Part shown: positions 9,377 to 60,565 of the stretch, one piece after another
How positions within the stretch are numbered: position 1 is the stretch's first letter
Layout: the number at the start of each line of letters is the position of its first letter
IMG/VR virus record: IMGVR_UViG_3300049043_000112
Span: 1-64,000 of that record
Strand: one strand, 5' to 3'
Length of the DNA: 64,000 bases
Translations under genes and position numbers: made by a program
Notes under the pieces: model-generated
Database searches by the model: none
What the model was told of the DNA's origin: nothing
What the model saw: only the letters and a program-made list of their open reading frames with translations

Positions 9377-9407
9377 TCAAATTAAGTTAACTTTTTAAAA
9401 TATTTAG

Positions 9408-9487
9408 TGCCCAAGAGAGGACTCGAACCTCCACGCCGAAGCACATGATCCTAAGTCATGCGTGTATACCAGTTTCACCACTTGGGC
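9408..9487 (-). tRNA. tRNA-Leu (anticodon TAG), CCA not encoded
   Basis: Acceptor stem GCCCAAG/CTTGGGC, anticodon arm CATGA-CTTAGGA-TCATG, variable arm, GGTTCGAGTCC T-loop. Confidence 0.93.
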
Positions 9488-9489
9488 AA

Positions 9490-9562
9490 TGGAGATAAGG
9501 AGACTCGAACTCCTGACATCAGCCTTGCAAAGACCGCGCTCTACCAACTGAGCTATATCCCC
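9490..9562 (-). tRNA. tRNA-Ala (anticodon TGC), CCA not encoded
   Basis: GGGGATATAGCTCAGTTGGTAGAGCGC...TTTGCAA...GTTCGAGTC...ATCTCCA, 73 nt. Confidence 0.95.
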
Positions 9563-9577
9563 AATAAGACCATTATA

Positions 9578-16975: not shown

Positions 16976-17134
16976 TTATTCTTCCTTTCCCTTTCCACCA
17001 CCACCAGGATTAAATGGAACTGCCTTACCAGCAGGAACATTCTGAACTTTTCCTTTCATATAAACCTTATGCGCTTTTGCCATAGGGTACTTAATGGTTT
17101 TTATTTCATTAAGAAAGTGGGCGAAAGTTTTCAT
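16976..17134 (-). CDS. 52-aa basic peptide with capsid-targeting-like N-terminus
   Basis: MKTFAHFLNEIKTIKYPMAKAHKVYMKGKVQNVPAGKAVPFNPGGGGKGKEE*; TCTAAATA at 17146-17153. Not in the ORF track. Confidence 0.7.
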   Translation of the reverse strand: MKTFAHFLNEIKTIKYPMAKAHKVYMKGKVQNVPAGKAVPFNPGGGGKGKEE

Positions 17135-31134: not shown

Positions 31135-31542
31135 CTAGCTTTCTTTAATTTCTTTAAAGATTCTTTCAAGTTTTTTGCGAGCATCTTCAACAGAAGCAAT
31201 ATAACCCATTTTAGATGAAGGTTTTACCTTACCAGAAGGATTATAAACATCTATTAAATCTTCATCTTCAATATAATCATTATAAATATTAATCAATTTT
31301 TCATCTTTAGTTTCTGTCATTGTAATAATTTTATCAAGTCTTACAATAAAAAAATCATCACTAGATAGTTCCATCCAAGATTTAACTTTAAGATGAGTCC
31401 CTTGATGATTATGAAAAGTTTTTATAGTGATTGGATTTTGCAATACAACTACAGGATCACCATCATTTTCATCGATTATGACTAATGATACTATTTCCTC
31501 TCCTGAAGTTAATTTAACTATTGCGTAAAACTCTTCTCCCAT
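31135..31542 (-). CDS. Conserved hypothetical (Sm-like)
   Basis: FYAIVKLTSGEEIVS...LQNPI...W...GYIASVEDARKKLE. Confidence 0.75.
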   Translation of the reverse strand: MGEEFYAIVKLTSGEEIVSLVIIDENDGDPVVVLQNPITIKTFHNHQGTHLKVKSWMELSSDDFFIVRLDKIITMTETKDEKLINIYNDYIEDEDLIDVYNPSGKVKPSSKMGYIASVEDARKKLERIFKEIKES

Positions 31543-33004
31543 TAGTTTTTTAGCGGAATGTTTACAATATCATAATTAAAGTTTTCTTCGTTATAAACTT
31601 TGATTCTTTCTATTAAGTGATTGAGTGTATAATTTTTTCTTGACTTATAACTGATATCATCGGCAATATCATATAGAGTTGCTTTTACTTTGTTTTCGCC
31701 TTTTCTGAGAACTCTGCCGATAGATTGGAGATTTCTAATTCTCGACTTCGATGGTGAAGCAAACACAACGTTATGTAAGTTACGTATATTAATACCGGTA
31801 GAAAAAGTCCCATAAGATGCTACGATAATTGCGTTATTTTCTTTTTCTGTAATTTCACGAACTTTTTCTCTTTCTTCAGTATCTACACCACCATGTACAA
31901 AGAATACGTGGCGATCATCCTGAATGCTATTATTTATGAGTTCGTATAAAGGTTGCCCGTGACCTTCTACTCTTGAAAATAAAATTAGAGTATTGCCTTT
32001 AAGATCAATAGCAAGGTTTTTAATGAACTTGTTTCTACGTTCGTGATTGATAATATACTGAACCTTATCTTCAAAAGTCTTAAACTTATTCGGTGGATGT
32101 TTCAATAGAAGAATATTAATATCTAACTTCGCAACGTGACCCTTCTGCATCAGTTCGTCAGTGCGAATGATTTTATATGAAGGTCCAAATAATCCCTCAA
32201 GAACCCACTTGTGCGTTTGTGTTCCGTCTAGCGTTCCTGTAAATCCAAAACGATACTTAGCATCTGAAAGTTTTGACATTATAGATACTAATGACTTTGA
32301 TTTAAACTGGTGTGCTTCATCTCCAACGACCACATTAAATCTTGAGAAATATTGTCGGGGAAGTTTGTAGATGGACTGCCAGGTTGTAATGATAACCTGA
32401 GAGTCCGTTTCTCTTTCTTTACCCGCATATATCTTGTGGCAAAATGAACCTACGTCCCACCCATAATCTGCAAAGTCTTTATACATCTGCTCTACAAGGG
32501 ATGTCGTTGGAACGACTATCAGAGTATTTTGCCCTTTCTTAACGTAATATCTCACAATCGCATATATCATCAGAGACTTTCCAGAAGCAGTTGGAGATAT
32601 CAACAACTTTCTATTGTGTTTTAAAGCGTCGTATACTCCCTCTAACTTGGTACTTACGGGGAGCATACTTGCTAATTGATGTAATATAATCTTTAACTCC
32701 TTCTTTTGAAATCATTTCATTGACTTCAAAAGGAAGACCATAGAACTTATTATTTGCAAACTCGTAGGTATATTCGTGATTTTCGCAAAATCTAATCAAT
32801 TTATCTAGAAGACCTACATAAATCTCACCTGCTTGAGGATTGAATAAACGTATTTTTCCATCCCAGTGTCTATTACGGAACTGGGGCATAAATTTTGCTC
32901 TGGCACGTCAAAGGTGAACTGGTCCTGAAGTTCATAATAGACGTGTGGTTCTGCCTTTACCTGAAGATATACCTCATTCTTTTTGATATAACCAAATGTG
33001 ACAT
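31542..33004 (-). CDS. uvsW: SF2 DNA helicase, two indels (~32905, ~32643)
   Basis: MSHLVISKKNEVY...WDGKIRLF; PTASGKS, GDEAH, GFTGT, QSIGRVLR. Confidence 0.95.
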
Positions 33005-33062: not shown

Positions 33063-33481
33063 GATTGGAACTTGTGCCATTCCAGAGCATTCTTTATTTG
33101 GAATGTTCTATTTGATATACACTTAATAACTTCTTCCAAGAACTTTAACATAATGTCATAGTATCTTATCTTGAGTTCTATCTTACTTAACTTCTCATCC
33201 CCATCCATATGCCTCTGTAGTGCCTCTTTGTCCCGAACTTTATACGGAAATGGATCTTCTTCATAAACCTCTTGTGGCGCCTTTCCCGTGTAATAGTTGT
33301 AGCGTTCAAGTTTCACTCGGTTGAAAGTTTCTCTTGCTTTTTCACGCAACAAGGTAATAGTATTATAAACTGTATAATACTTGGCATGTAGTTGAGGAAT
33401 TTTTAAAGACTCATCGTGTAAATTATCAGGATCGATGACAGAATCTTTCTGCCACATTTCCTGAATTTCATCAAGATTCAT
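33050..33481 (-). CDS. uvsY: Recombination mediator
   Basis: W.KDS.ID..NL..ESLKIPQLHAKY...R.FQIKNALEW. Confidence 0.9.
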   Translation of the reverse strand: MNLDEIQEMWQKDSVIDPDNLHDESLKIPQLHAKYYTVYNTITLLREKARETFNRVKLERYNYYTGKAPQEVYEEDPFPYKVRDKEALQRHMDGDEKLSKIELKIRYYDIMLKFLEEVIKCISNRTFQIKNALEWHKFQSGFN

Positions 33482-34005
33482 AGACCTGTTTTGATATTAT
33501 AGACAGTATACTTGAAAGTGACGTTTGCTGTAAAGTACTGAACATCAGTTAATGTGGAATCAAATTCTAAAGAAGTTAATGAAACTGGAAATAAATCTTT
33601 AAATTTTACAATTGCATTTGTATTATAACTGCTATCCAAAATATAAAGGCTACCATCACTAAATGCTTTTTTAGGGTCTTCTCCAGTACCATCAATTAAA
33701 TCATAGTACTGGCGTAAACTTTCTGGCGCCCCAAGACCAGTCATCCAATTATGAATTGCCATATAATTTACCATATCTTCATCAACAATAAATCTTAAAT
33801 TCAAATCGCCATATTGAAGTTTTCCTCCTGGTACATCAATATCTTTTAAGTATGTTGGTTGTTGTAAAGTATCAAGTGTAATTTCTGGAATTCTAGCAGA
33901 GTTGCAAAAGAATACTGCCTTTGGTTCTTTTGATAAAGTGAATTTGAACCCAACGGGAGATAAAAAATTTCTATTTTGAATTTGTTTTGAAAATGCGTTT
34001 GACAT
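33478..34005 (-). CDS. gp3: Tail completion / tube terminator protein
   Basis: NRNFLSPVGFKF, IPEITL, YGDLNLRFIVDE, FKDLFPVSL. Confidence 0.88.
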   Translation of the reverse strand: MSNAFSKQIQNRNFLSPVGFKFTLSKEPKAVFFCNSARIPEITLDTLQQPTYLKDIDVPGGKLQYGDLNLRFIVDEDMVNYMAIHNWMTGLGAPESLRQYYDLIDGTGEDPKKAFSDGSLYILDSSYNTNAIVKFKDLFPVSLTSLEFDSTLTDVQYFTANVTFKYTVYNIKTGL

Positions 34006-34006: not shown

Positions 34007-34627
34007 TTAATACCTTCCGTACATTAAACCCTTACTTTGTGTAACTGGAAAGAGTGGTTTAGTTTTTGTCATTGCAGGTTTTGGTGCATTACGGACATAA
34101 ACTTTTTGTTTACCAAATTCTTGCGATGTAATATTTGATTTTCCAGAAACATCTCTTGCAGTTTGTAATGCAAGATCATAACTTGTTGATTTATTATAAG
34201 ATCCAGCAGGTCCAAAATTACCAGTATCTTGTGCAGAAGTTGTTGCAATTGGTGCTTTTGTTCCTGGTGCCTTTGTCATTTGAAGTTTGGTTCCAAATGG
34301 TATAGATGGTTTAGTACTTGTCTTAGATGCATAAGGTACAGCAACTAATTTTTGTTTATCATCAAACTTTGCACCACTTGCAGTTAATGATCCAGGAGTA
34401 TCTACCTTACTATAAGAACTTACATTGACTGGTTTCCAACCATAACGTTGTTGTTCTGCACTAGTATGTGCTCTTTGAGTGAATTTTCCAGATGATTTAT
34501 CTAATACACCAGGTTGGTAGTTCTTATATGCAAGAACTTGTTGAGATTGTGGTTTTTGTTCTTTATCAAATCTCTAAAACTCTCTTATCTCATATGCTTC
34601 CAAACAAAACTGCTTATATGGTTTCAT
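34007..34627 (-). CDS. RlpA-like double-psi beta-barrel (lytic transglycosylase-like) protein with capsid-targeting-like N-terminus; in-frame TAG at 34574-34576
   Basis: A single frame 34627 to 34007: MKPYKQFCLE...VSSYS...TASGAKFD...VAVP...IPFGTKLQMT...AQDTG...SYDLA...FGKQKVYV. The track shows only the last 90 aa. Confidence 0.7.
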
Positions 34628-34647
34628 TTAAACAGGGTACTTTTAAA

Positions 34648-34655
34648 TATTTAGA
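34648..34655 (-). promoter_or_regulatory. Late promoter variant TCTAAATA
   Basis: Immediately after the gp23 terminator, 21 nt upstream of the ATG at 34627. Confidence 0.65.
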
Positions 34656-34656: not shown

Positions 34657-34680
34657 AAAAAAGAGGGTCCGAAGACCCTC
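34657..34680 (-). terminator. gp23 terminator
   Basis: GAGGGTC-TTCG-GACCCTC-TTTTTT. Confidence 0.9.
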
Positions 34681-34701
34681 TCGATTGAGTTGTGAATTAA
34701 C

Positions 34702-36105
34702 TCACATAAGGTTAGCAACTTTAACTCTTCTGTAGTAGACGTTAGCGTTGGTTGTAAGAGCACCAGCACCTGCGGTAAGACCCTCTGCGAATGGGTTAGC
34801 AACCATTCCATAACGGGTCTTAAATCCAATCTTAGGCTGGAAGGTATTCTCACCAACTGCACGTACCATCTGGAGAGGTACGTATGGGCAGTAGAAGAGA
34901 CCAGCATCATAAGGTGAAGAACCCTTGTATCCAACAACGTAGAACTGGTTAGCAGCAACGTTTGCCGAATATGGATCAATATAAACTCTATACTTACCTT
35001 GGAGAACACCAGCGAAGGTGTTGCCAGTGTCATCAACGTTCAAGTTAGCGTTGAGTGCAGGGGTGTAATCGAGAACACCAGCCATTGCAAGTGCCGAAGC
35101 AACGTCAGCAGAGCAAAGGATCGTGTTACCCTTCCCTCTACGAGTTTGTTGGGCGATTGCGTTTGCATCACGCTCGATCTGGAAGATCAGACCCTTGAAC
35201 TTCTCAACCGACCAACGACCGTTGGAGTCAACGTCAAGGTCAAAAGTACCAGCGGTAGCAGTGTTGACCTGAGCACCAGGCTTAGCAATCTTGTAGATTG
35301 TTCTGATGACTTCACGGTTGATTTCAGCAAGAATCTCAGTGCTGAGGATGTTAGCAAGCTCAGCTTCTGCATTCAGACCGTGAATTGCCTTCAGGTCTTG
35401 TGCGAGCTCGAGTGAGTACTCAGCTTTCAGAGCACGTGACTTAGCGGTTACAGTGACTTTCTCGATCGAGAACGCCATCTGGTTGAACTGATCAGATTCA
35501 CCTAATGATTCTGCCTCATCAGTTCTCATTCCCTGACCAACGTTATACTGGTTAGCACCAGTTGCAGCGTTGTTTGCTTGGTTTGAACCATCAAGGATTG
35601 ATGGGTTTGTACCACCTTGAGCAGTAGTACCCATACCAACAGTACCGTCGGTCCAGCCATTGGTATTGTTGAAACCACTATCTTGACCAGAGAATGCGGA
35701 ATCTACTTCGTTATAGAAGGTTTCAGATCCACTCTGAGTCTTATAGCGTGAACGCATTGCGAAGATAAGTCCAGTAGGACCATTCATTGGTTGAACGCCA
35801 CACAGATCGTAAGCGATCAGGTTAGGCATTGAACGGCGAATAAGGGAGATTAGTACAGGGTCGAAACCTTGTAGTGCTCCAGTTGATGCGCCACTTAGAC
35901 CAGTTCCAGTTCCAGTTGAAGTGCTGGTGAAGTTGGTTGGTGCTTCGTAGAGAAACTCACGCTCTTCGCGGATAGTTTTCTCTTGGTTTTCAAGCAGGAT
36001 AGCAGTTACCGCTCTACGATGTGAATCTTTGATTTCATCGAGACCTGAGTAGTCCAGAATTGGTGCCCACTTCTCCTGCAGTTGTTCAGTGTTGTACATC
36101 TGCAT
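34702..36105 (-). CDS. gp23: Major capsid protein
   Basis: EKWAPIL, FDPVLISLIRR, GVQPMNGPTGLIF, KSRALKAEYSLELAQDL, GFKTRYG. Confidence 0.98.
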   Translation of the reverse strand: MQMYNTEQLQEKWAPILDYSGLDEIKDSHRRAVTAILLENQEKTIREEREFLYEAPTNFTSTSTGTGTGLSGASTGALQGFDPVLISLIRRSMPNLIAYDLCGVQPMNGPTGLIFAMRSRYKTQSGSETFYNEVDSAFSGQDSGFNNTNGWTDGTVGMGTTAQGGTNPSILDGSNQANNAATGANQYNVGQGMRTDEAESLGESDQFNQMAFSIEKVTVTAKSRALKAEYSLELAQDLKAIHGLNAEAELANILSTEILAEINREVIRTIYKIAKPGAQVNTATAGTFDLDVDSNGRWSVEKFKGLIFQIERDANAIAQQTRRGKGNTILCSADVASALAMAGVLDYTPALNANLNVDDTGNTFAGVLQGKYRVYIDPYSANVAANQFYVVGYKGSSPYDAGLFYCPYVPLQMVRAVGENTFQPKIGFKTRYGMVANPFAEGLTAGAGALTTNANVYYRRVKVANLM

Positions 36106-36154: not shown

Positions 36155-37323
36155 TCACTTTTTGGCGACTCTTGTAAGAGTTTGAAGATATGCTTCCATA
36201 ATTGGGGAGACAGACTTAACTTCTCCTTCTTGTGAGGCATCTTCAGACAGACTTTCGGAGTCATCTTTTTGAGTACCAGTATTTGTTGGGAAATATGATT
36301 CCCTCAGAGTTACCAGTTTCTCACGATAGTTTGCTTCACTATCAAACTCAACATTTTCTGCAAGAGAAGCGAGTTTGTCCTTCTGAGAAAGTGCAAGACC
36401 CTCAGCGACATCTGCAAAGATTACATCAGCAACTGACTCTGCTAATCTTCTATTGAGAGCAACGTTTCTTTCGATTTGCTCGTTGAGTTTTTCTTCCATT
36501 TCATCAAGTTTATCTACCATACTCTCGATAACATCATATCTATCTTCAGGGATTGTTACATAATGATCTTCAAAAAGACTCTTCATTCCGGCAAGGAATG
36601 ATTCTGTCATTTCAGTCTTAAGACCGTGCTCAACTGCGAGTGCATTTTCTTGGATCCACTCGTCAGCAACATACTCAAGGTAAGCATCAACTCTGTCGGT
36701 CAGGCTTTCCTTGATTGCTTCGATTTCTTCTACAAGGGTCTGCTCATAAGCAGATTGTAGAGATTCTTTAATTTCAGCAACCTTAGATTTGATTGCTGCT
36801 TCGAAGATGGTACGGCTTTCTCTTCAAATTCTTCAGAAAGCTCTTCACCTGCAAGAAGGGCATTGACATCTTCTTCGATATCAAACTCTTCTTCCATTTT
36901 CTTTTTACCTTTCTTTTTACCACCTTCTTCTTCCTCTTCCTCTTCTTCCTCCTCTTCTTCTTCCTCTTCTTCCTTGGCTTCGGTTACTTCCTCTTCACCA
37001 TCTTCTAGTTCTTCTTCATCCTCTACTTCTACGAGTTCTTCTTCATCCTCAACTTCTTCTTTAGCAACAGATTGCATTGGTTCAGCAGCTGCTGCCTTTG
37101 CATTAACTACATTCTTTACTTGAGCAAGAGTTTTGCCTGGAGTATTGAGATGTGCTGACTCGTCATCTGGACGATAATTTTCCGGAGTTGGACCACCTAA
37201 ATCTTCCCAAGCGCCAGTTTGTCCTGGAGTAATAGATCCAGTACCGGATTGCATTGGTTCGGCAGGTGCAGCCCCTTTGGTTACTACGTTTTCCATTTCT
37301 TGTAAATTTCTACCAACGGACAT
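36155..37323 (-). CDS. gp22: Prohead core scaffold protein, -1 indel near 36815
   Basis: LSEEFEEKA(RTIFEAAIKSKV...DRVDAYLEYVADEW...EMTESFLAGMK); long acidic tract. Confidence 0.92.
36900..37060 (-). repeat. GAA/GAG low-complexity tract encoding poly-Glu in gp22
   Basis: EEEEEEEEEEEEEE followed by GGKKKGKKK. Confidence 0.8.
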
Positions 37324-37353
37324 TTGTTTAGATATTTAGATATAATCTATATT

Positions 37354-37363: not shown

Positions 37364-38014
37364 TTATAGATTTGAAAGAAATTCTTGGAACAATTGTACT
37401 TTATGTTCCTGTAGAACTTTTTCATCAACTAGCGTATTTATTCTACGCTTAGTTGATTCTGCCAATCTTTCACGAAGAATTCCTCCTTCCCAGACCCATT
37501 CCTTTCCTTCCATAATTCCTGAAACAAATGCATCAGGGGCAGAAGGATCGGCAACGATATCTGCTGCTGTTGCAAGCATAAAATCTTCACCAACAATTTT
37601 GCAACCACTGTGATCCTCTTTTAAAGAACCAACACCACGAGAGGAAACTCCAAGAGTAACCCCTTCATCAATTAGGGATGAAGCAATTTTACCCATTGGG
37701 GTGGATAAAAGTTGTGCTTTACCAATAAAATTACTTCCATCTTGATAAAGTTCGCAAATTTTATGAGATACTCTATCAAGATTTACGGTTGGTCCATCAG
37801 GGTGCCCAAGTTCACCAAGAGCACGACCTTTAGCAATGAAAGATTCGGCATATCTCTTAACCTCTTTAGAAAGAGTGTCTAAAGGATACATTCTTCCATT
37901 ACGATTTTTGATGTTTCCTTGGAGAAAAACACCTTTGATATACATTTTTTTGCCGGAACCCTTACCTTCGGTAATAAATTCTACCTTTTGAATTTCTTCT
38001 GTGATGAGTTTCAT
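37364..38014 (-). CDS. gp21: Prohead protease
   Basis: MKLITE, GELGHP, LDRVSH, GVSSRG, DIVADPSAP. Confidence 0.96.
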   Translation of the reverse strand: MKLITEEIQKVEFITEGKGSGKKMYIKGVFLQGNIKNRNGRMYPLDTLSKEVKRYAESFIAKGRALGELGHPDGPTVNLDRVSHKICELYQDGSNFIGKAQLLSTPMGKIASSLIDEGVTLGVSSRGVGSLKEDHSGCKIVGEDFMLATAADIVADPSAPDAFVSGIMEGKEWVWEGGILRERLAESTKRRINTLVDEKVLQEHKVQLFQEFLSNL

Positions 38015-38756: not shown

Positions 38757-40453
38757 TTATATCTTACCACCTTTGGGTTCCTGTGGAATTTCTGTAGGTG
38801 CGGGTGCTGCTGGTTCTGCTGGAACTTCACCTAATGCTGGTTGTTCTCCTACTGCTCCTTCTGGTGGAACTCCTTCTGGTGGAATTGGATTTCCCATTTC
38901 ATCAACGGGAGCATTAGGATCTGGAAGAATACCTTTTTCAATTTCATCATCAATCTGTTGATCAATTTCAATAATTTCAGAATCTGTTTGGCGAAGAATT
39001 TTTTTACGAACATACTCTGTAGAATAATATTTTCCAATATAAGGTTCAACTTGTGTCATCAATGAAATACGGTTTGTTAAAATTTCTGCTTCCTTTAGTT
39101 CTGCAAAATGATTATCATATAAGAAGTCATATTGAATATGATCCTCCATCCTTTCCCAATCTTCTGGAGAAACAATATTCTTCAAAAGAAGTTGAGTACG
39201 GAGCATATCATTAAACATATTCGAAAAACGCTTTCTAAGTCTCCCTACAAACTTAGAAAACTTAAGTTCATCTCTTAAAATTTCAGATGAACGTCCAAGA
39301 TTAAACCCATCTCCTCCACCAGCAATTCTTGTTTCTGGAACTCCAAGTGCTCTATAAAGTTTCTTTTGAAAATATTCAATATCTGCAAGTTCACCAAGGT
39401 TTTGACCACCAGGTAAGGTTGTAATCTCGGTTCCTCTACCACCTCTCTTCTTGGAAGCCAAAAATCTTCCAGCATCGCCATATATTTGCGATCATCACGA
39501 ATTTCTCCAGTATTTGCATCATAAACAAGTTTATTACGATAACGACTCATCACTTCTTTAAGATATTGCTCTGCTTTTACTTTAGGAAGATTGCCAACAT
39601 CGATATAGAAAATTCTTCTTTCTGGAGCACGTGATAATCTGTAGATAACCAGAGAATCTTCAATCATTCTTAACTGGTTAAGTGCTTTAATCGCTTTATG
39701 AAGATATGAAAGTACAGTTCCTTTATTTCTATCTACAAGTCCAGAAGTGCAATAAGTAATTGAATCTTTTGCAATTTTAAGTGATCCTTTTGCTGCTCCA
39801 CTCAAAGAACCCATGGGATAATTTGGTGCTGGAGAATAAATGAAATATTCTTCAACATCAGAATAACTCATTTCTGAGTTAGTAAGATTTGCATTTGCGG
39901 TTAAAGTACTTACGATTGGTTGTCCATTTTTGCCGTTCGTCTTTACCTCTTGACGAACATGCTTCATTTTCATTGGATCAATGTATCTGATTTCTTTTAT
40001 ACCTTCTTGTGGTTTTTTAGTATCAATAACTTTCAAGTAATATAATCTACCATCAACATACCAATTCCTAAAAATTTCATGACACTTTCTATCAAAGTCC
40101 ATCATCTCTTTGATGGACTTAAATTCATCACGAATTGCTTTTTTGAGTTTATCGCTAGCATTTAAATTTGATAATTCAATTTCAACTGGAGAATCATAAA
40201 GATCACTTACAAGGGCTTCGTTTACAACATCTTCAATCGCAGCATCACACTCCGGATGTAATGCCATTTCACGATAACGACGCATTAAATCAAACTCAGT
40301 TCTATAGACACCTTCAATATCTACATACTGACCGTAGAATCCAGATTGAATATAATAATCAACCCCGTCCTCATCTGTCTGAGGAACGGGGGATACTATA
40401 GATTTGGATTTTTCCTCTGTATCTTCAATCGAAAAACCAAAAAGTTTCGCCAT
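38757..40453 (-). CDS. gp20: Portal vertex protein, -1 indel near 39447
   Basis: MAKLFGFSI, YRLSRAPERRIFYIDVGNLP, LEDFWLPRR(EGGRGTEITTLPGG). Confidence 0.96.
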
Positions 40454-46580: not shown

Positions 46581-46892
46581 TTATTCACCCCAGGATAATC
46601 TTTCTGGTCTGTATCTTTCTGTATTTTTAATCTTTAATGGATTGGTTGAATTTGGATAAACGTTATGGACAATGGCACCTGGATACTCTGCTTGAAGTTG
46701 TTCTGCAAGTGCGTTCTTATCCATCATTTTTCCTTCAACTTCCATACGATAAAGTCTTCCTTGCCAAACTATATCAGCAAGAAAAGATTCAGTTGCAGTT
46801 TCTTGTTGGGATGAAGAATTCATATAAAGATTTCCGTTGAAATCTCCAGAAATGTTGATACTTTCTGAAATAAATTGTTGAAAGGATTTCAT
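46581..46892 (-). CDS. Hypothetical protein with capsid-targeting-like N-terminus
   Basis: MKSFQQFISE then a globular domain (ADIVWQG...YPGAIVHNVYP). Confidence 0.7.
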   Translation of the reverse strand: MKSFQQFISESINISGDFNGNLYMNSSSQQETATESFLADIVWQGRLYRMEVEGKMMDKNALAEQLQAEYPGAIVHNVYPNSTNPLKIKNTERYRPERLSWGE

Positions 46893-46893: not shown

Positions 46894-48619
46894 TTAGTTG
46901 CAGTTCCAACGACGAAGGGCTTTGTTAATTCTTGAATCTGGATCTCTTGCAGTTTTAGCAGAAGTTAGTTTGGATTTCATTCCGGACATACGTCGGCAGA
47001 AGTTTGCACGACGCTTTGCTCTTTTACCAGTTGGTTTCTTTTCGGTTACAGCAGTTTGTAACTTAGAACCTGGATTCTCACGTCGATAAGCGTCTACTGC
47101 TTTTTGACTAAGACCATCAGTTTTATCCTGACGATTTACTTTTTGCCAATCTTCCATAAATTGACTAAAAGTTTTATTTTCTTGAACTCTACCCATAATT
47201 TGATCAATCTGCTGCTGTTGTTTTTCATTTCTTTGTTTAATTTTTTCAGCAGTTACTTTTGCTTTATCATATACCATTTTACCTGCCAGTGCAGTTCCTG
47301 CTGCCAGTCCAGCACGAATACCCAATCCAATCAGAGGATTTTCATTTAATTCATTAGACTCTTTCATTTCTCCACTATCTACATAATCTGCTGCAGTATC
47401 AATATAATCTGCTGCTTTAGTAATTTTTGATTGAACCCAAGCCTCAATATTTCCTTCTCCCTTCATTTTTTTACGAAGTCTTTTTGCTGCAGAAATAATT
47501 GTAGAAAGTTCAGAGCGAGCCATTGAATACTCATGATCATAAGACTTCAGGAAAATTTCCAGGATGAACAGTTGCGATATTATATTTTAATTGGTTTGTT
47601 GTTAATGCAGATGGTCTAGAAAACATATCCCAATACTTAGATCCATACTTACATTCATCACGAGTTTCATCTTTTTTACATTTAGGGCAATATCTAATCA
47701 TTCCTTGCTCCTCTTTTACTGGTATGCAATTTGGAACCAATTTTTTACCTTTCTTTTTCATTCCTTCTTCCTTATACCCATCCCAACAATCTTCTGATTT
47801 TGTTCCCCAATTTGCAGCACCAACTTTACGACATTTGACCAATGCTCCTGAAGCATATGCACTTGGCCAGACATCATATCTTGACTTAACTTTTTGGTAA
47901 CAGGCATCTTTTTTACCACTACCTTTACCTGGTTTATCTTTAACTTCTTGTAAATCCATTTCTTCAGTTCTTACGTTAGTTGGTTTTGCTCCACCAGTTT
48001 TTTCTGGTTGATTAGGATCTAGACGATTTTTTCTTCTTCTTGCCTTTTCCTCTTCTTCTGGAGATAAATTTGCTGCCATTTTAGAACTACCGCATTTTGG
48101 TGTAGAAGTTTGACCTGGTTGGCGAGCACATGGTTTTCCTGCATATTTGCCTCCAAGTTGAACCCAACCTTTTTTTCCATCAGAAGACTTTGATTTGCCA
48201 AACCAGTCATGAAGACCTTCATCACCAGAAGTTGTTTCTTCTTTTACATCTTTGAACTTTTTATGATGCTTTTTAGCATCAGATTCCATTTTTTTCAAAC
48301 GAGTATAATAATCTGGAATTTCATCAAGATGTTGAAGAGCAATATCAGTTGCTAAGTCTTTATCCTTTGTATGCTCATGTTCAATTGGAATACCCATTTC
48401 AAGTTGCTTCTTTACAAAAGAAACTTCAAGACGATGTTTTTTTGCAATCTGTTCAACCGATTTATGAGATTTCAATTCGTGCATTTCATTGAAAGGAGAT
48501 TTTGATTGAGTTGATTCACCTTTTGCTCTTTTTTTACGAGCAGCACAGTGTGCTTTTTGAGAAAATCCCTAAGGACTATCACAGTTTATTGATCTTTTGT
48601 ATTTGTCAGACCAACTCAT
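46894..48619 (-). CDS. Modular basic/Cys-rich late protein (~574 aa), in-frame TAG at 48569-48571 and +1 indel near 47547
   Basis: MSWSDKYKRSINCDSP*GFSQKAHC is in frame with 47537..48484; FPE-SYDHEYSMARSEL joins 46894..47523; TCTAAATA at 48643-48650. Confidence 0.7.
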
Positions 48620-53368: not shown

Positions 53369-56300
53369 TACGCTAGGGCAATACTTCTAAGATCTCTAAA
53401 CCTTGGAGCATATGCTTGTGATCTTCCTGACATGACGAGTTTAATTGTATATCCAGTGAAACTTCCAAGATTGTTAGCACTAAATTCATATTCTAAAAAT
53501 TAATCCTTTAAGCTTGCAGGAACAAACACATCTGGAAGTCCACTGTTTTTGGATGGATCAACAATATCCAAATATCCGTCTTGATTATTGTCAATAGTTA
53601 AATTATTGTATCCAGGGAATAGTTCAAATGCTTGACTTACTTCACTCGAATCGGGTCTAATTAAACTATAAAGAACTCTAAAATCTGCAGTTGAATCTCT
53701 ATAAGCACTTAATATAACTTTCAGAGATGTTGCTGGTTGTTGCAGTTTTACGGTATTTGAAACATAAATTGATGCATGTGGATCACCAATAATGTTATTA
53801 ACTCTATTATCTAAAGTATAATCTGCAATTGGAGAATTTAATCTGTTACTTATAAGTTGTGCAGAAGACTCCTGCCAGAAAATAACAGGAGAAACGTTTT
53901 GATCGGTTGTTGATAAATCAACTTTAACGGTAAACGATTTATTTCTCAATACAGATCCAAGATATGTTTGCTCGTTAATATTTGAGCATACAATTCTAGT
54001 CGAATTTAGATTATTTGCAACTCCTATTTCTACAGGTTCATAACCTAAATCTACAAAAGAACTTTCAGTTCCATTTACACTAGTTCCAGATATGGTTCTT
54101 ATTTGAGCAAGACTAGAAGTTACTGCAGAAGGATTGACAACTGATATTTGTGGAATAATGGTATTAAACTGAATGTTTTCGGAAGATCTTACTTCAGTTC
54201 CGCCGCACAACGCATTGGAATTAAATGATAACTGAGGAGCACTAGTAATTGATCCATCTGTTGATCTATTAGTTACATTAGCATCAAATGCAAATCTATC
54301 AACTTCAATATAGTAATTATCAATATCAATGCCAGTATCGCTAATATCATGTGTTTTGTTAATTCTTCTTAAGGATACTCCACCAAGTTCATACTTATAA
54401 ACTTGTGTATTGGTTGGATAAGTTAGAACTAGCGTGGAATCAATACCTCTAGTAATTCCATTTAATGTACCACTTCCTACAGAAGTATATTTAATAATTT
54501 CATTTTCAATCTTAACAAATCCAGGATTTGTTGCGCTTACAGTAAGACCTTCAAAAGTATTGAAGTTAGATGTAGAAGCAACACTAATTGTCGTGTTTGT
54601 TGATGTAATTGGTTGTGCAAGAGATGTGGGTATGATGTCAGTAATTGCATTTGAAATAGTTATCTTGTTGGTATTCGCATACATTCCATGATTAAAGTGA
54701 TTTACTCTAAAGAAGTTTCCAGCGTTAATACCACCAATTGCAGTTGATGAGAGGACACTTGTACCAGCAATTGAAGTGGCATTTCCAGAAGTATCATAAT
54801 AAACTAAGGTTGAAATACCTGCCGTTGTGAAAGAATTCCCTTGAACATTTGAAAGGTATAATGTATCAAGACCTGTAATAGAGTTAATTGTAATTCTTGC
54901 GTTTCTTCCAGACACTGAAGAAACAGAAGATGTGACAATTCCAACAACATCACCAACAGAATATCCATTTCCTGGACTTACAATTGTCGCAACACCTACA
55001 ACACCACTAGTAGCAGTGATGTTCAGAGTCAATCCTGTTCCATTACCAGTGATTGCGTATGTTGAAACTACACCATTTGAGTAATTTGTTCCACCAGTGG
55101 TTATTCCAATTGTTGCAACAGAACTTCCAGTACCAACAATATAGCCATTAAGTATATGGAGTTCCAACTGAAGAAACTTTTCTACCTGTAGTTAAGATAC
55201 CGATATTTGTTGCTGAAGTTGTAGTTGTAATTCCAACTTTAAGTTGTCTGGGTAATAAAGTGAATGGATTTGAATCTAATTTTGGAACATATCCATTACT
55301 TTCGTTTAGGGTTGGATTATGGAAGAATGCACTTCCTGTAGAAGAAACAAATTTAGATTTATACAGTTTAAACTTTAAATCTTGATATTGATTTGCTGTC
55401 CATATAGATCCATTTTGTGATTTGAATAGACTTCCTAAAGCAAACTGTCTTGAATATCGAATGCTTTGTGAGTCTGGTAAGGTTGAGGTTTCAATAGTCT
55501 TTTGACCCATTTCAGCAATCCAAACTTCATATTGAATCACTTTGGGGTGCAAGAAGAACAATTGCATATTCTAATCCTGGTGCAAGGTAAATAGGATGAT
55601 CAAATGTAACTTTTGTTGCAACCGACGCATTTTTTGAAATTTGGATATCACTTGGTTTTAGTGTTACTGGATTTCCAAGAATTTTTGTTGTTGGCGTTCC
55701 TAGTTCAACGGTTCTAACTTCAACAGTAAGTGGTGCATTGCCAGGATCTTTATTTGCAAAATACAAATCAACTGCAGTTAAAAACGCACCATTAACGTCT
55801 TCATTTGGAGTGTTTCCATTTAAGTTGTCTGTAGATGCACCAACAGTAAATGACTGCGCTAATGGATCAACATAATAAATTGTTGTTGTAGATGTAATTG
55901 TTCTTTGTTTTTGCTGCCAAGTTCCTTCAGACTTATAAATTGTCTCTCCACTTGAAATCAGATTACTTCCAGGAAGAGGAACTTCGTTAGTTGAACTAGA
56001 TGTCAACTTGTAAACTTTAGATCCTGTTGCAATTCTAATCGCAGGAGTTGGATTTGTATTTGGATCTTTGAGGAAAAATGCTCCTGCTAAAAATCCATTA
56101 GAAATCACTAATTAATCTAAGATCTTTTACATAAGCAACTGCACCGCTTGTTTGCCCAACAAGTTTCATACCCAATGCTAAATATCCAGAATACAAACCT
56201 TGTGCTTCAGAACATAAAGATTCCGTATCAATATTTAAAACCTTAGATGATGCACTGTAGGACGCTGGAATATTTTCTGTAGTCGAATATGGGTTTGTCG

Positions 56301-59300
56301 TATATGTAACTGATGGATCACTATATGGACCTTCTTTATGATTTGCTTTTGCAACTCTAAAACTAATTGCCTGACTTAAAACTCCAGAAGTAGTATTTAC
56401 ATATCCAAAAACTTTTTCACCGACTTGGAAAGATGATGAAGCACCGTAGTTTTGAAGAGTTAAGTCCGTAGCAATTTCTACAAGTTTTGGAACAAAATCA
56501 ACCAATCCATTTCCATCTAAGAATTGGTAATATCTAGTTAAAGGTCTTAAGTTTACTGCTTTAAATCCAGTATTTCTGGATCTCATATATAACTCTTTTC
56601 CAGTTGCAACAACTTGATCAACGGTTGAAGTGCTAGTGCTTTGCCCAACAACTTGATAACGTCCAGTAGCATACAACCATACCCAATTTGTTTGGTTAAC
56701 ATTTACGTCTGGAAGACGAATAGTTCTAACCCAACTATCACTTGCTGGACTTAATTTAATAGTTCCACTATAAGAGACAATATTGAATGGATTAACGTTT
56801 TCAACCTTAGTTGCAAATAACTGTTCAATCCAACCAATTGAATTATATTTTAATGTGAGAATTTCTCCAGTTTTTTGAACATTTGAATCAAATAGAGTAA
56901 AGTTTTGGGATAAATCTAATGTCTCATCTGTAACACTTTCGGCAGAAACTGGTTTAAGATTTATTGTATTTTTACTAGTTTGTGTTATTAATTCATCATT
57001 ATCAGTATCTACTTCAATTTTAGATATTTCTAAATTAATTAAATCTGTATTTTTAAAGTCGTCAACAAAGAATCCTGTTTTAAAGCGACTTAATCCTTGT
57101 GCATCACGTATTTGGAGTGTTTGTGTATTAAGTTCTAATAAAGATAAAGAAGTAACTCTTTCTAAATTGTTGACTCGATTTTCAATCTTGCCAATATCAC
57201 GCATCGTATATCTCTTATTATCCACAAGAGTTATACCTGCGTCTTTAGGATTGTATAAGTATGGTGGTAATGTGATTGTAGCAATTTCTATGGAATCGCT
57301 TGGTTTTGCTGGTTCTTTTGGTTGTACTGCTGGAGTTCCTTGAACCACTGCAAATTTGCCATTTTTATCAATGAAAAGTTTATCAATTCTTCCAAGATAA
57401 AACTGATATCCAATTAAAGCACTTTCATTGGGGGACATTAAAATTTTTGGTTCTGATCCAAAAGATCTTGAAGAAAAATCAAAAGGTGATGCTGAAGTGC
57501 TTGTAAATTGAGAAACTCTTGGTCTAAAGTCTAGAGTATCAGAAGATCTAATATTATTTTTACCAATTAATGGAATGTCTGAAGTAAATCTTTCGCCATC
57601 ATAACTATTAACAGTAAATACATCTCCGGTATCACTTGTAGGTACAGAATAATAGTCAAAAACTACTAAAAGTTGTCTTGATGGAGCACTTTCTCCAGAA
57701 TTTCGAACAATTTTTGAATAATCATAATATTGAATCTTTTTGCCCTTTATCTAAGGTATATTTTGTTGTTATATTTTTAAAACTTCCAAGAGTAATAGTA
57801 GAAATTGTAGTTTGAATGTTAGATTCTTCAAAAATTACCTGTTCTCCTTCAGAGAGAGTATTTCCATTAAGATAAACAATCCCTAAATTGTTTGTGGAAG
57901 GTTTTGAAACAATTCTGGCGACTGCGTTACTTGTTTTTCCAATAATATTTTCTCCAATAATTGCATTACTATCGACATTTACTACAGAACTAAATGAAAG
58001 TCTAGTTGGAACTGGAGCATTTGTATCAAGAGATTCATAAATTGCAATTACTTTAACAACATCTGGATAATTTAAACTAATTTCTTCGTCCTGAACTCTT
58101 AATCCATAATATTGATTATAAATTAACCCATCATTAACAGAAGTGTTTACACCAACACCAGATTGTGGATTTTTAGACAAAGTTATATTAATAGTTTTAC
58201 TTCTATTAAACTGCTTGACTTTGCTTTGAATAGAATTTTTTACAAAAGTGGCGTTAATTACTGAAATGGATTTGTTGGAAATATTTGTAAATGTTACTTG
58301 AGAAGAATTGCCACTTAAAGCAACTTTATCTGAAGTTAAATTTTCAATTGTTCCATCAGCATAAAAAATTGAATATCTTTCTTCGTCAAATGCTTCAAAT
58401 CTTGCAGAAGATGTATTAATTCCAAGATTAAAATTACTGGTGCTGACTGTAAGAGATCCACCAGAAGGAGTTAAAGTTCCTGTTGATTGTGCAGTAAACG
58501 TAATTGTTGAAGTGCTTAAATCTGTGGAAGCAATATTTGAATCTGGAAGTTGTGCATACAAAAATCCCTTTTCATCGTTTAGAATTTTTGTTTCACCTAG
58601 AGAGTATGATCCACTATATTGAGAAGTAGGTAATGCACCATCACAAACACCGTTTACACTAGTAACACTAGCAAGTGTAAGTGATAATCCAGTAGAAGAG
58701 ACAGAAGCAACTCTATTATATGTTTCAGTAGATATTCCTGCTCTTTGATATCTAACTATATTATCTGTTTTAATTCCGACAAAACTAAATGGGGAAGAAA
58801 CTGTTGCTGTGCTAACTCCAGCACTTGCAGCAGTAATTGTGATTGTTTCTGGTCTTAAAGTTTTACTTAGTTGTGTATCTGCTATAAAAGCAGTACTAAA
58901 TCCTGATATAGAAGTTGGTTGATGAACCAATCTAACATCCTCTATACTATAAACCTTAATAGAAGATATAAATCTAGAGTAATTTTCTGATCCATTGATT
59001 AAAATCTGTTCACTAACTGAAAATGTTCCAGAAGTTTGACTTAAAAGAACAGCAGACCCACTAATGGAAGCAACATACCCACTTGCACCGCTACTTTTTC
59101 CTTTTATGAAAGAAGATGTTGGTAATTCAGTTGAAGTTAAAGATTGATTTAAAGTTAATTCAGTATAAGTTTGAACATCATATAGATACAAGTCCCAGTT
59201 AGTAGTTTGATTTGAATATGCAGCATCAGTTACGTTAAATGTATAAACCCTTGCAGAACCAACGGTTGAACCTGCAGCAACAGTTGTACTGTCTTTTCTT

Positions 59301-60565
59301 CTACCTTGAAAATATACGATTCCTTTTTGAACTGGAGCACCAGATATATTATTAACTCTAACTAAATTCCCCATTTCAAAAGGAATATTTACAGAAGAAA
59401 CTGTATTAGTTGTTCTTGGTTTTGAAACATCTAAAATTTCAACTCCAGTTTTTTCTACATCATATCCTCTCACATAAGCTTTACCTGGAGACATTTTAAA
59501 GCACATCAAATCATCTGATGGTGTGTTTCCTTGCTCTGTTTTTTCTGTATCAAAGAATAAACCATCATTACCAATTCTATTATTTAATGAATTGTTTAAT
59601 GAAAATTGAAAAGGAGTAACGACATAATCTCCAGATTCATCATAAGTTCTTTGTGCTAAGTAATCTTTTATGTTTGAATATGTAGATTTGGTTTCAATCT
59701 TCTTAATTGCGCCATTTTGTACTCTAAGTAACTCTACAAAATCAATATCATTATTATCAGTTAAAAGTCTTTTTGTTAAAGTTAATGAAATTTTAAACCT
59801 ATCCGCTCCAGGGGCAGCATAGTTTGTAAAACCTTTTGCATTATCATACAAACTAGAATCATCTCTAGCAGTGATAATTTCTTCATTAATTCTTAATCCT
59901 ACTCTATAAGAAGGAGTATTTGTATAATAATCTAAAATAATTGTTTGTTTTGGAACTCTTACGAAAGTTCCTCTAATAAAATATACACCTTCACCAATTG
60001 ATGCTGCAAATCCAATCGAAGTTGAATTGGAAATGATTGTGGTGGCAAAAGGTGTTCCAGATGTAATTGTAGTAGATTGATATGTAATATTCTCTTCAAT
60101 GTATAAAGTTTCATTATCTTTGAAAGAACTTACCTCAAAATTAGAATCTAGAGCTAAGATATTTTACATATAAGGTTACATATTCTACATCAGAATTTGG
60201 AAGTTGAACTAACTGAATATTTGCAGTAACTCCAGAATCGGTTCCTATAACTTTTTTACCTACAAATTTTTCAATGTAGTTTGATATATCAACACCGTAC
60301 TGTAATTGATTTAATTTAACTGCATAAAACTGCCCATCGTATGCAATATTTCCAGGGATCACCATTGATCCGTCTTTGAAAATATGACTTCCGAACGATT
60401 CTACTTGATCTTGTAGAATTGATTGTAATGTGTTAAGTTCACGAGCTTGAATTGCCCTTCCTGGATTAAATAGGACCTTGTAATAGTTCTTATCCCTTGC
60501 ACCCACATTCACTTCCGAAAAATCATCAAAATATGGATTTATATTGAGATTAGTTTTTTGACCAT
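53368..60565 (-). CDS. Giant virion structural protein (DUF4815-type, ~2400 aa), broken by about six indels and an in-frame TAA at 53500-53502
   Basis: NLNINPYFDDF...YYKVLFNPGRAIQARELNTLQ; NYAAPGADRFKI; DNKRYTMRDIG; FKTGFFVDDF; DPLAQSF; DLKFKLY; ends APRFRDLRSIALA*. The pieces join with 1-nt corrections. Confidence 0.85.

What the first reader, a model, noticed from the sequence alone, without database searches (positions are those of the whole stretch)
34007..34655. Hidden RlpA-like lytic transglycosylase with a CTS-like leader right after the capsid gene
Seen: a 206-codon frame masked by one TAG. Motifs align in order with the RlpA double-psi beta-barrel (SSY / TASGAKFD / IPFGTKL / AQDTG / YDLA / G..KVYV), including both Asp positions. 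It has its own late box after the gp23 terminator. Known: RlpA is a lytic transglycosylase acting on peptide-stripped glycan. Inference: a head-packaged muralytic enzyme ejected to help cross the thick cyanobacterial peptidoglycan, which would be unusual for a myovirus that normally uses a baseplate lysozyme.
Basis: partly seen in the sequence, partly recalled or inferred. Interest (0 to 1): 0.65.

Follow-up and report, generated by a model that had tools for sequence, protein, structure and literature searches.

The report
Capsid-targeted RlpA-like protein gene, broken by TAG
Just after the capsid gene, this T4-like cyanophage carries a conserved, so far unannotated gene joining a T4-style "pack me into the head" leader to an RlpA-like cell-wall-enzyme fold, but this copy is cut by a stop codon that is probably one of many sequence lesions in this assembly.

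Summary
On the minus strand an ATG (34627) opens a 206-codon frame with a single in-frame TAG (34576-34574). It lies between gp23 and a tail-tube-like gene, behind a hairpin terminator and a CTAAATA box.

More than 150 metagenomic proteins and 68 of 71 IMG/VR loci carry the same gene intact. They mostly have Trp where the window has TAG.

No Pfam model hits the protein. An AlphaFold model (pLDDT 82.7) is nevertheless a double-psi beta-barrel. Its best matches are PA4485 (Z 11.9) and the lytic domain of the cyanophage A-1(L) baseplate hub (Z 10.8). A profile-profile comparison with canonical RlpA-like domains gives 94.5% probability and keeps both RlpA Asp positions.

The leader resembles the T4 capsid-targeting sequence MKTYQEFIAE and ends in the [LIV]-x-E motif cut by gp21-type proteases. 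Such a protease is encoded nearby, and at least five other ORFs in the genome share the leader.

The TAG is not recoding. There is no suppressor tRNA, TAG ends 24 of 176 long ORFs, and 16 of 77 conserved genes (portal and scaffold included) carry frame breaks. It is most likely an assembly error or a defective variant.

Head packaging and muralytic activity remain inferred.

The parts
34661..34682 (-). Intrinsic terminator of the gp23 (major capsid) transcript: 9-bp stem, 4-nt loop, then a T run
   Evidence: The same hairpin plus T run is conserved in syntenic loci.
34648..34654 (-). CTAAATA late-promoter-like box, 20 nt upstream of the ATG
   Evidence: Sequence. TAAATA lies within 80 nt upstream in 29 of 38 distinct homologous upstream regions, mostly as ATCTAAATA right after the terminator. 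Its reading as a T4-type late promoter rests on own knowledge of the T4 late consensus TATAAATA.
34577..34627 (-). Leader, codons 1-17 (MKPYKQFCLEAYEIREF): T4 CTS-like motif, with I-R-E at codons 14-16 as the predicted prohead-protease cleavage site
   Evidence: Alignment A2. T4 CTS is MKTYQEFIAE (PMC8442874). gp21 cleaves after L/I-X-E (PMC9026906). All 38 distinct leaders have a [LIVMF]xE.
34574..34576 (-). In-frame TAG (codon 18), in a column where homologues mostly have Trp, otherwise Phe or Leu
   Evidence: No suppressor tRNA. TAG is a normal terminator in this genome.
34544..34573 (-). Variable Lys/Pro/Gln-rich linker (post-TAG residues 1-10), low model confidence
34442..34543 (-). Conserved N-terminal beta extension plus helix (post-TAG residues 11-44, VLAYKNY...), pLDDT above 90; outside the DPBB matches
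34076..34441 (-). Double-psi beta-barrel domain (post-TAG residues 45-166). Invariant Asp residues: D58 (34402-34400), D116 in DTG (34228-34226), D133 in YDL (34177-34175).
   Evidence: AF2 model; fold matches; hhalign to RlpA-like alignment A4; invariant columns; coordinates
34010..34075 (-). Disordered basic C-terminal tail ending in SKGLMYGRY, a motif shared by a subset of homologues and unique in this genome
34007..34009 (-). TAA stop, one base before the ATG of the next gene
34702..36105 (-). Upstream neighbour: major capsid protein gp23
   Evidence: Pfam Gp23, E 8.6e-153
33478..34005 (-). Downstream neighbour: tail-tube-like protein
   Evidence: phrog_45 tail tube, E 7.8e-43; weak Pfam tail-tube hits
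37364..38014 (-). gp21-type prohead serine protease, the presumed processing enzyme for the leader
   Evidence: Pfam Peptidase_S77, E 8.7e-35

Best explanation
This is a real late gene of a conserved but unannotated family found in T4-like cyanophages (Kyanoviridae). The intact protein has three parts.

1. A 10-17 residue leader, MK[ST][FY]xxF...[LIV]xE. It works like the T4 internal-protein capsid-targeting sequence: it docks the protein into the scaffolding core of the prohead and is cut off by the gp21-type prohead protease after the Glu. This step is inferred.

2. A basic mature protein of about 20 kDa (pI 10). Its core is a divergent RlpA/3D-type double-psi beta-barrel that keeps the two Asp positions of RlpA. 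The fold and the homology are shown. Glycan-strand cleavage is inferred.

3. A short disordered tail.

The mature protein would sit in the filled head and leave it at infection.

In this window the copy is interrupted at codon 18, directly after the predicted cleavage site, by a TAG where relatives mostly have Trp. A single G-to-A change from TGG would give TAG. The stop is a lesion, not a code feature. The same genome carries about 21 frame breaks in conserved, partly essential genes. The most likely cause is therefore sequencing or assembly error. The next most likely is a genuinely defective variant.
For: Gene and family:
- 153 homologues at E<=0.01, 180-205 aa and uninterrupted.
- 68 of 71 IMG/VR loci have an intact ORF with the leader, about half of them in the same gp23 / tail-tube slot.
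- Cultured or assembled phages DSL-LC03 (77% identity) and S-PRM1 (51%) carry it in synteny.

Fold:
- AF2 pLDDT 82.7, pTM 0.74.
- VIA-align Z 11.9 to PA4485 and Z 10.8 (26% identity) to A-1(L) hub residues 288-392. Expansins and kiwellin score Z 9-10, MltA 6.8, YuiC 5.4.
- Foldseek E 1.5e-5.
- In BFVD the best matches after S-PRM1 are phage 'rare lipoprotein A' proteins.
- hhalign against 9 canonical RlpA-like domains: 94.5% probability, E 8e-8. D116 aligns with the NDRGP Asp and D133 with the LDLS Asp.
- The A-1(L) hub domain lyses EDTA-treated Anabaena (PMC10966104).

Leader:
- Homologue leaders such as MKTFKEFITE compare closely with T4 MKTYQEFIAE.
- [LIVMF]xE is present in all 38 distinct leaders, matching the L/I-X-E specificity of gp21.
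- A Peptidase_S77 gene lies nearby.
- The mature protein is basic, as T4 internal proteins are.
- The leader motif occurs 6 times in this genome against 0 in 20 shuffles.
- S-SRM01 has a different 56-aa body behind the same leader in the same slot.

Lesion:
- No CTA-anticodon tRNA among 23 tRNAs.
- TAG ends 24 of 176 long ORFs.
- In-frame stops elsewhere are of all three kinds and align with varied residues.
- 16 of 77 conserved ORFs have frame switches, including portal and scaffold.
Against: - No Pfam DPBB_1 or 3D hit for any of the 120 aligned family sequences, and no sequence-level PDB hit. Membership rests on the fold and on one profile-profile comparison.
- The invariant His of the canonical TAAH motif is not kept, and there are two insertions, so catalysis may differ or be lost.
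- No virion proteome or cleavage data exist for any member.
- T4 internal proteins enter the cytoplasm with the DNA, where there is no peptidoglycan.
- Reads could not be consulted, so error versus real mutation is undecided.
- A substitution is a less typical assembly error than the indels seen elsewhere in this genome.
Confidence: 0.68

Rival explanations
1. The TAG is a true nonsense mutation in a real viral lineage. The gene is an accessory cargo gene and is simply dead here (a pseudogene). The phage does without it, as its nearest relative S-SRM01 does.
For: - S-SRM01 lacks the DPBB gene altogether and has only a 56-aa leader-bearing ORF in the slot.
- The gene occupies different loci in different phages, as expected for dispensable cargo.
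- TGG to TAG is a single transition.
- Another UViG copy (L075) is also broken.
Against: - The rest of the frame is fully open for 188 codons and keeps all family-invariant residues. Any inactivation would therefore be very recent.
- The same genome has frame breaks in portal, scaffold and UvsW. These cannot all be real in a viable phage, which makes artefact the more economical explanation for all the lesions.
Confidence: 0.27
2. The TAG is decoded: by stop-codon reassignment, by a suppressor tRNA or by programmed readthrough. The full 206-residue protein would then be made.
For: - The frame stays open and conserved on both sides of the TAG.
- The TAG lies exactly after the predicted cleavage site, so a readthrough residue would be the first of the mature chain.
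Against: - No suppressor tRNA among 23 tRNAs.
- TAG terminates 24 of 176 long ORFs.
- Other in-frame stops are TAA, TAG and TGA aligned with many different residues, often inside short out-of-frame patches.
- None of about 220 homologues or loci has a stop at this column.
Confidence: 0.04
3. The protein is not packaged. The conserved N-terminus is just a family-specific N-terminal region. The DPBB protein would act from inside the infected cell late in infection, as an accessory to lysis or cell-wall remodelling, like the canonical phage RlpA-like proteins.
For: - Canonical RlpA-like genes are common in cyanophages: 26 Synechococcus phage records.
- Neither this genome nor S-SRM01 has a canonical one, so this family could be filling that role.
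- The gene has late-type expression signals.
Against: - Canonical phage RlpA-likes carry hydrophobic signal peptides (alignment A4). This family has a hydrophilic leader with no export signal, so it could not reach the periplasm on its own.
- The leader is shared with unrelated small ORFs in the same genome and with a different protein body in S-SRM01. That is the pattern of a portable targeting tag rather than part of the enzyme.
Confidence: 0.2
4. The protein is packaged and ejected, but the DPBB is not muralytic. It would act in the cytoplasm as a binding or inhibitor protein against a host defence or host enzyme, as T4 IPI* does. Several DPBB proteins are inhibitors (Streptomyces papain inhibitor, kiwellin).
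For: - Fold matches include the papain inhibitor SPI (Z 9.2) and kiwellin (Z 10.0).
- T4 internal proteins are diverse anti-restriction cargo behind a shared CTS (PMC3012670).
- Ejected internal proteins reach the cytoplasm.
- The canonical His is lost.
Against: - Both RlpA-type Asp positions and the TASG..F motif are invariant across the family.
- The closest phage structure is an experimentally lytic hub domain at 26% identity.
Confidence: 0.18

Closest known systems
RlpA-type DPBB lytic transglycosylases (Pfam DPBB_1, PF03330), including the signal-peptide-bearing 'rare lipoprotein A' genes of cyanophages
   Same: - Double-psi beta-barrel fold.
- Profile-profile homology: 94.5% probability, E 8e-8.
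- Shared TASG-x-F, (I/L)PFGT, D-x-G and x-D-L motifs, with both Asp positions kept.
   Different: - Below Pfam detection.
- The TAAH histidine is not conserved.
- Insertions of 9 and 6 residues.
- An extra N-terminal beta extension.
- No lipobox, signal peptide or SPOR domain; a CTS-like leader takes their place.
Baseplate hub gp15 of Anabaena myophage A-1(L), 'endoglucanase' domain (PDB 8KEA chain A, residues 266-430)
   Same: - A virion-borne DPBB domain of a cyanophage.
- Z 10.8, rmsd 2.7 A over 101 residues, 26% identity.
- Shown to lyse EDTA-permeabilised Anabaena (PMC10966104).
   Different: In A-1(L) the domain is part of an 899-aa baseplate hub, placed at the tail tip. Here it is a free 20-kDa protein with a head-targeting type leader, encoded among head genes.
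T4 internal proteins IPI/IPII/IPIII and their capsid targeting sequence
   Same: - An N-terminal tag of about 10 residues similar to MKTYQEFIAE.
- An L/I-x-E protease site.
- A small, highly basic mature protein.
- Several paralogous tag-bearing genes with unrelated bodies.
- A gp21-type protease in the genome.
   Different: - The body is a DPBB enzyme-like fold, not an IPI-type inhibitor.
- The gene sits directly after gp23.
- Packaging and cleavage have not been shown for any cyanophage member.
3D-domain lytic transglycosylases (MltA C-terminal part, B. subtilis YuiC; Pfam PF06725)
   Same: - Same fold clan.
- The D-T-G ... D-L arrangement of conserved Asp residues.
- The language-model look-alike search points to 3D clusters (score 0.90).
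- Fold matches: MltA Z 6.8, YuiC Z 5.4.
   Different: - No Pfam 3D hit.
- Weaker structural scores than to RlpA-like or expansin-like barrels.
T7 gp16 internal core protein with a lytic transglycosylase domain (own knowledge, not checked here)
   Same: A head-packaged, ejected protein with a muralytic domain.
   Different: - T7 is a podovirus, and its core proteins build the trans-envelope channel.
- The lytic transglycosylase domain is of a different fold class (lysozyme-like, not DPBB).

Membership tests
RlpA / DPBB_1 (PF03330) | Double-psi beta-barrel fold | tested here: met
   AF2 model pLDDT 82.7. Z 11.9 to PA4485, Z 10.8 to the A-1(L) hub, and designed or VCP DPBB domains at Z 7-8. Foldseek and BFVD return RlpA-like hits.
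RlpA / DPBB_1 (PF03330) | Match to the Pfam DPBB_1 HMM above the gathering score (28.8 bits) | tested here: not met
   No hit at E<=1 for the window protein. None of the 120 aligned family sequences hits DPBB_1 at E<=10. The genome-wide PF03330 scan gives only a 12.9-bit hit elsewhere.
RlpA / DPBB_1 (PF03330) | Conserved Asp residues of the N-D-R-G-P and L-D-L-S motifs | tested here: met
   hhalign A3 vs A4 aligns invariant D116 (DTG) with the NDRGP Asp and invariant D133 (YDL) with the LDLS Asp.
RlpA / DPBB_1 (PF03330) | Invariant His of the T-A-A-H motif | tested here: not met
   His is invariant in the 9 canonical sequences. In hhalign it falls opposite a non-conserved position next to a 9-residue insertion.
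RlpA / DPBB_1 (PF03330) | Export signal (lipoprotein or signal peptide), with or without a SPOR domain | tested here: not met
   The leader is hydrophilic and CTS-like, and there is no SPOR hit. Canonical phage RlpA-likes show hydrophobic N-termini.
RlpA / DPBB_1 (PF03330) | Lytic transglycosylase activity on peptide-free glycan strands | not testable with these tools
   Needs enzymology. PMC6895207 describes this property for RlpA.
T4-type internal (CTS-bearing) head proteins | N-terminal tag of about 10 residues resembling MKTYQEFIAE | tested here: met
   Window: MKPYKQFCLE. Homologues: MKTFKEFITE, MKTFKEFLSE. T4 CTS taken from PMC8442874.
T4-type internal (CTS-bearing) head proteins | Prohead-protease site L/I-x-E at the end of the tag, and a gp21-type protease in the genome | tested here: met
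   I-R-E at codons 14-16. [LIVMF]xE is present in 38 of 38 distinct leaders. Motif from PMC9026906. Peptidase_S77 at 37364-38014.
T4-type internal (CTS-bearing) head proteins | Several genes with the same tag but unrelated bodies; small basic mature protein | tested here: met
   The strict motif (acidic or Gln residue at position 10) matches 6 ORFs in the genome, target included, against 0 in 20 shuffles. A seventh ATG ORF has the looser motif. S-SRM01 has a different body in the same slot. pI 10.0, 20.5 kDa.
T4-type internal (CTS-bearing) head proteins | Physical presence in heads, cleavage of the tag, ejection into the host | not testable with these tools
   No proteomic data for this family were found in the held literature.
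Stop-codon reassignment / suppression of TAG | Suppressor tRNA, TAG avoided as terminator, recurrent in-frame TAG aligned with one residue | tested here: not met

The most novel reading that the evidence does not exclude
T4-like cyanophages use the T4 internal-protein targeting tag to load a cell-wall-active RlpA/3D-type DPBB enzyme into the capsid. The enzyme is released at infection. This would be the first head-packaged muralytic cargo in a myovirus, and it would show that the CTS system is conserved from coliphage T4 to cyanophages as a general cargo-loading device. In this genome at least five other tagged ORFs use it, one being the frameshifted counterpart of a 440-aa S-SRM01 protein with a cytidylyltransferase-like domain.
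Probability: 0.3. Interest if true: 0.72.

Novelty: new variant of a known kind. Interest (0 to 1): 0.5.

Why it matters
If the leader is a working capsid-targeting sequence, cyanophage genomes can be mined for their ejected cargo by searching for this tag. That would open a whole class of unannotated small late genes to study. A packaged DPBB enzyme would add a new route by which contractile-tailed phages bring cell-wall-active proteins to the host. It would also give a natural, portable tag for loading proteins into cyanophage heads.

For annotation, the family (more than 150 members, all labelled 'hypothetical') can now be described as a divergent RlpA-like DPBB with a CTS-like propeptide.

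For this particular record, the practical message is a warning. The assembly carries many frame-breaking lesions, so single in-frame stops in it should not be read as biology.

Tried and rejected
- Near-identical copies. Exact-pattern searches for the TAG neighbourhood, with the two bases after the T left free, found nothing in viral contigs or metagenome contigs. No closer population copy was available; the best protein relative is 85% identical.
- Sequence-level family assignment. Pfam on the protein, Pfam on all 120 aligned family sequences, PHROGs (only a 0.092 'endolysin' hit) and a PDB profile search gave nothing usable.
- RlpA homologue search. A word search seeded with the E. coli RlpA DPBB region returned only near-identical enterobacterial RlpA and was useless for building a profile. 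I built the canonical alignment from phage tblastn hits instead.
- Nucleotide-level gap counting against S-SRM01 was uninformative at about 80% identity, because the alignment produces many compensating gaps. The tblastn frame-switch count was used instead.
- Stop-codon recoding was considered and rejected.
- Literature. I could not retrieve the RlpA catalytic-residue paper. I therefore do not say which of the two Asp residues is the catalytic one.
- Not run: the search of protein representatives and complex prediction. The family was already well populated, and no binding claim is made.

Full report
**What is in the sequence.** The feature lies on the minus strand.
- After the major capsid gene (34702-36105; Pfam Gp23, E 8.6e-153) comes a 9-bp GC-rich hairpin with a T run (34682-34661).
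- A CTAAATA box follows at 34654-34648.
- Twenty bases further on is an ATG at 34627.
- The frame reads 17 codons (MKPYKQFCLEAYEIREF), then a TAG at 34576-34574, then 188 more open codons to TAA at 34009-34007.
- The next gene, a tail-tube-like protein (phrog_45, E 7.8e-43), starts one base later.
- No ATG, GTG or TTG occurs for 98 codons after the TAG, so an ORF caller sees only a 90-aa stub.

**It is a real, conserved gene.**
- The 188-residue part finds 153 proteins at E<=0.01 (best 1.5e-81). They are 180-205 aa long, none carries a Pfam domain, and all that have a name are called hypothetical.
- Two phage records carry an uninterrupted copy in the same place between gp23 and the tail-tube-like gene: Synechococcus phage DSL-LC03 (77% identity) and S-PRM1 (51%).
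- Of 71 IMG/VR loci, 68 have an intact ORF. About half are syntenic. Others sit between gp59/DUF1825 and gp32. One is the C-terminal part of a 674-aa ORF. One (L075) is frameshifted.
- The nearest sequenced relative of the window's genome, S-SRM01 (about 81% nucleotide identity over the aligned 75% of this region), lacks the gene completely. In the same slot it has a 56-aa ORF with the same kind of N-terminus.

So this is a mobile, dispensable late gene.

**The fold.**
- Pfam finds nothing, even at E<=10 and for every one of the 120 aligned sequences. A profile search of PDB sequences also finds nothing.
- An AlphaFold2 model built on the 120-sequence alignment is confident: pLDDT 82.7, pTM 0.74.
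- Residues 45-166 of the model form a double-psi beta-barrel. VIA-align scores:
  - Z 11.9 (rmsd 2.6 A, 94 residues) to P. aeruginosa PA4485;
  - Z 10.8 (26% identity, 101 residues) to residues 288-392 of the cyanophage A-1(L) baseplate hub;
  - Z 9-10 to kiwellin, expansins, loosenin and the Streptomyces papain inhibitor;
  - Z 6.8 to MltA and 5.4 to YuiC.
- Foldseek agrees.
- Among predicted viral structures, the best matches after S-PRM1 are phage 'rare lipoprotein A' and 3D-domain proteins.
- A language-model look-alike search points to 3D-domain clusters at score 0.90, which is only a lead.

**Remote homology to RlpA.** I built an alignment of nine canonical RlpA-like domains: E. coli RlpA plus eight phage proteins, the A-1(L) hub among them.
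- The profile-profile comparison gives 94.5% probability and E 8e-8 over 83 columns.
- TASG-x-F, IPFGT, the DTG Asp (D116, opposite the NDRGP Asp) and the YDL Asp (D133, opposite the LDLS Asp) all align. Both Asp residues are invariant in the family.
- The canonical TAAH histidine is not kept, and there are two insertions.
- Residues 11-44 form an extra, well-predicted beta extension that the fold matches do not cover.

The A-1(L) domain was shown to lyse EDTA-treated Anabaena (PMC10966104). RlpA's DPBB is its catalytic domain and acts on denuded glycan (PMC6895207).

**The leader.**
- The T4 capsid targeting sequence is MKTYQEFIAE (PMC8442874).
- gp21 cleaves after L/I-X-E, and the first 10 residues of IPIII suffice for head incorporation (PMC9026906).
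- Family members begin MKTFKEFITE, MKTFKEFLSE or MKSFNQFCKDANIQE. The window has MKPYKQFCLEAYEIRE.
- All 38 distinct leaders contain a [LIVMF]xE between residues 7 and 22.
- A Peptidase_S77 (gp21-type) protease is encoded at 37364-38014.
- The mature part is strongly basic: pI 10.0, with 29 K+R against 11 D+E. T4 internal proteins are also highly basic.
- The motif MK[STP][FY]..F..[EDQ] occurs six times in the 236-kb genome, always at an ORF start on the coding strand. It occurs zero times in 20 triplet shuffles and zero times in the reversed sequence.
- The canonical RlpA-like proteins of cyanophages start with hydrophobic signal peptides instead.

Together these features fit a portable head-targeting propeptide. 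Packaging and cleavage themselves are inferred, not shown. I found no report of CTS-type tags or of this family in cyanophage virions in the held literature.

**The TAG.**
- In the alignment the TAG column holds Trp in most homologues, otherwise Phe or Leu. TGG to TAG is one transition.
- There is no sign of decoding. None of the 23 tRNAs has a CTA anticodon, and TAG ends 24 of 176 long ORFs.
- The genome is full of lesions. The scaffold gene gp22 has a one-base deletion relative to S-SRM01 near 36814.
- Across the genome, 16 of 77 conserved ORFs of at least 150 aa switch frame, 21 events in all. They include the portal gene (39443-39464) and a giant structural gene with five events.
- UvsW has a short out-of-frame patch (32712-32816). 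In-frame stops of all three kinds align with many different residues.
- The record is an IMG/VR genome rated 100% complete.

A phage with all these breaks could not be viable. The most economical reading is therefore sequencing or assembly error, with a genuinely defective variant second. Reads could not be consulted, and no near-identical copy was found, so this remains a judgement. I estimate roughly 0.65 artefact, 0.3 real nonsense and 0.05 decoded.

**How it most likely works.** In intact members:
1. Late transcription starts from the CTAAATA box. The promoter function is inferred from the T4 late consensus, which is own knowledge.
2. The tag docks the protein in the scaffolding core.
3. 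The prohead protease removes the tag after the Glu.
4. The basic 20-kDa DPBB protein stays in the DNA-filled head and leaves at infection.

Its biochemical activity is most likely binding or cleavage of glycan strands in the RlpA/3D manner. T4 internal proteins travel with the DNA into the cytoplasm, after the tail has already crossed the wall. A cytoplasmic role as a binding or inhibitor protein is one alternative, and a non-packaged late role in the cell wall is another. Neither is excluded.

**Novelty.** Both components are known kinds: the RlpA-like DPBB and the T4 CTS. Their combination is new, as are the divergent DPBB subfamily and the evidence for a CTS-tagged gene set in cyanophages, none of which I found described. 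I file it as a new variant of a known kind. It is of moderate interest as a family, and of low interest as regards the TAG itself.

Noticed in passing
window 36155-37335 (-), break near 36814-36817: The scaffold gene gp22 is split into two frames by a one-base deletion relative to S-SRM01 (GAAAGC-CGT against GAAAGCACGC).
   Followed up: yes
window 535-537, 1474-1508, 7945-7949, 39443-39464, 44131, 47546-47553, 49393, 51481, 55146-60159 (five events), 61732; outside the window 64618-64660, 74641, 105374, 139105, 146086, 187969: Frame switches in 16 of 77 conserved ORFs compared with S-SRM01, including the portal gene and giant structural genes. The record looks like an error-rich assembly or a defective genome. 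Any single in-frame stop or frameshift in it should be treated with caution.
   Followed up: partly
window 31542-32984 (-), stops at 32712-32816: UvsW helicase has a short out-of-frame patch with TAG and TGA stops, so it is called as two ORFs (374 and 92 aa).
   Followed up: partly
window 7888-8322, 16976-17134, 46581-46892 (all -); genome 87463-87651, 225197-225403, 234441-234536 (all -): Six further ATG ORFs start with the same T4 CTS-like leader (MKSFFQFITEA, MKTFAHFLNE, MKSFQQFISE, MKTFQQFMEQ, MKTFQEFVEG, MKTFREFLNE). Several have TAAATA boxes upstream. They are candidates for a set of head-packaged cargo proteins. The ORF at 46581-46892 belongs to phrog_1742 (function unknown).
   Followed up: partly
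window 7020-8322 (-); S-SRM01 L085:5428-6747: The CTS-like ORF at 7888-8322 is the N-terminal piece of a gene that is frameshifted in this window. Its intact 440-aa S-SRM01 counterpart also starts with a CTS-like leader (MKNFHQFITEA) and has a cytidylyltransferase-like domain (Pfam E 8.7e-7). It may be a packaged nucleotidyltransferase.
   Followed up: partly
L001:3624-3794 (S-SRM01): In the same slot after gp23, S-SRM01 has a 56-aa ORF with the same leader (MKSFQQFQED) but no DPBB body. The slot behaves like the hypervariable internal-protein loci of T-even phages.
   Followed up: partly
L016:2444-3016 and similar loci (L015-L020, L058, L062, L065-L068): In another group of T4-like cyanophages the same leader-plus-DPBB gene sits between gp59/DUF1825 and gp32 instead of after gp23. 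The gene has therefore moved between loci.
   Followed up: partly
L070:1013-3037: Here the DPBB part is the C-terminal end of a 674-aa open frame whose middle matches a polynucleotide-kinase PHROG. An internal MSYYEYWKEFIDE stretch looks like a leader, so this may be two genes read as one.
   Followed up: no
L075:2381-3040: Another IMG/VR copy of the gene is frameshifted in the middle: in frame at both ends, with a string of stops between.
   Followed up: partly
window 34010-34036 (-): The C-terminal motif SKGLMYGRY is shared by a subset of homologues and is unique in this genome. Its role is unknown; it could be a second docking or processing signal.
   Followed up: partly
genome 209420-209644 (-), outside the window: Two canonical RlpA-like queries give weak tblastn hits here (E 0.06-0.11). 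It may be a second divergent DPBB gene.
   Followed up: no
genome 173195-176575 (-), outside the window: An open frame of 1126 codons in which the first 749 codons have no ATG, GTG or TTG.
   Followed up: no
window 9407-9563 (-); genome 140350-140667 and 212757-220731: The genome has 23 tRNA genes, two of them in the window (Leu-TAG, Ala-TGC) and a large cluster near 213-221 kb. None is a suppressor.
   Followed up: yes
L092:121-435 (DSL-LC03): DSL-LC03 carries both a canonical 'rare lipoprotein A' gene and the divergent CTS-tagged DPBB gene, so the two are not simple replacements for each other.
   Followed up: no
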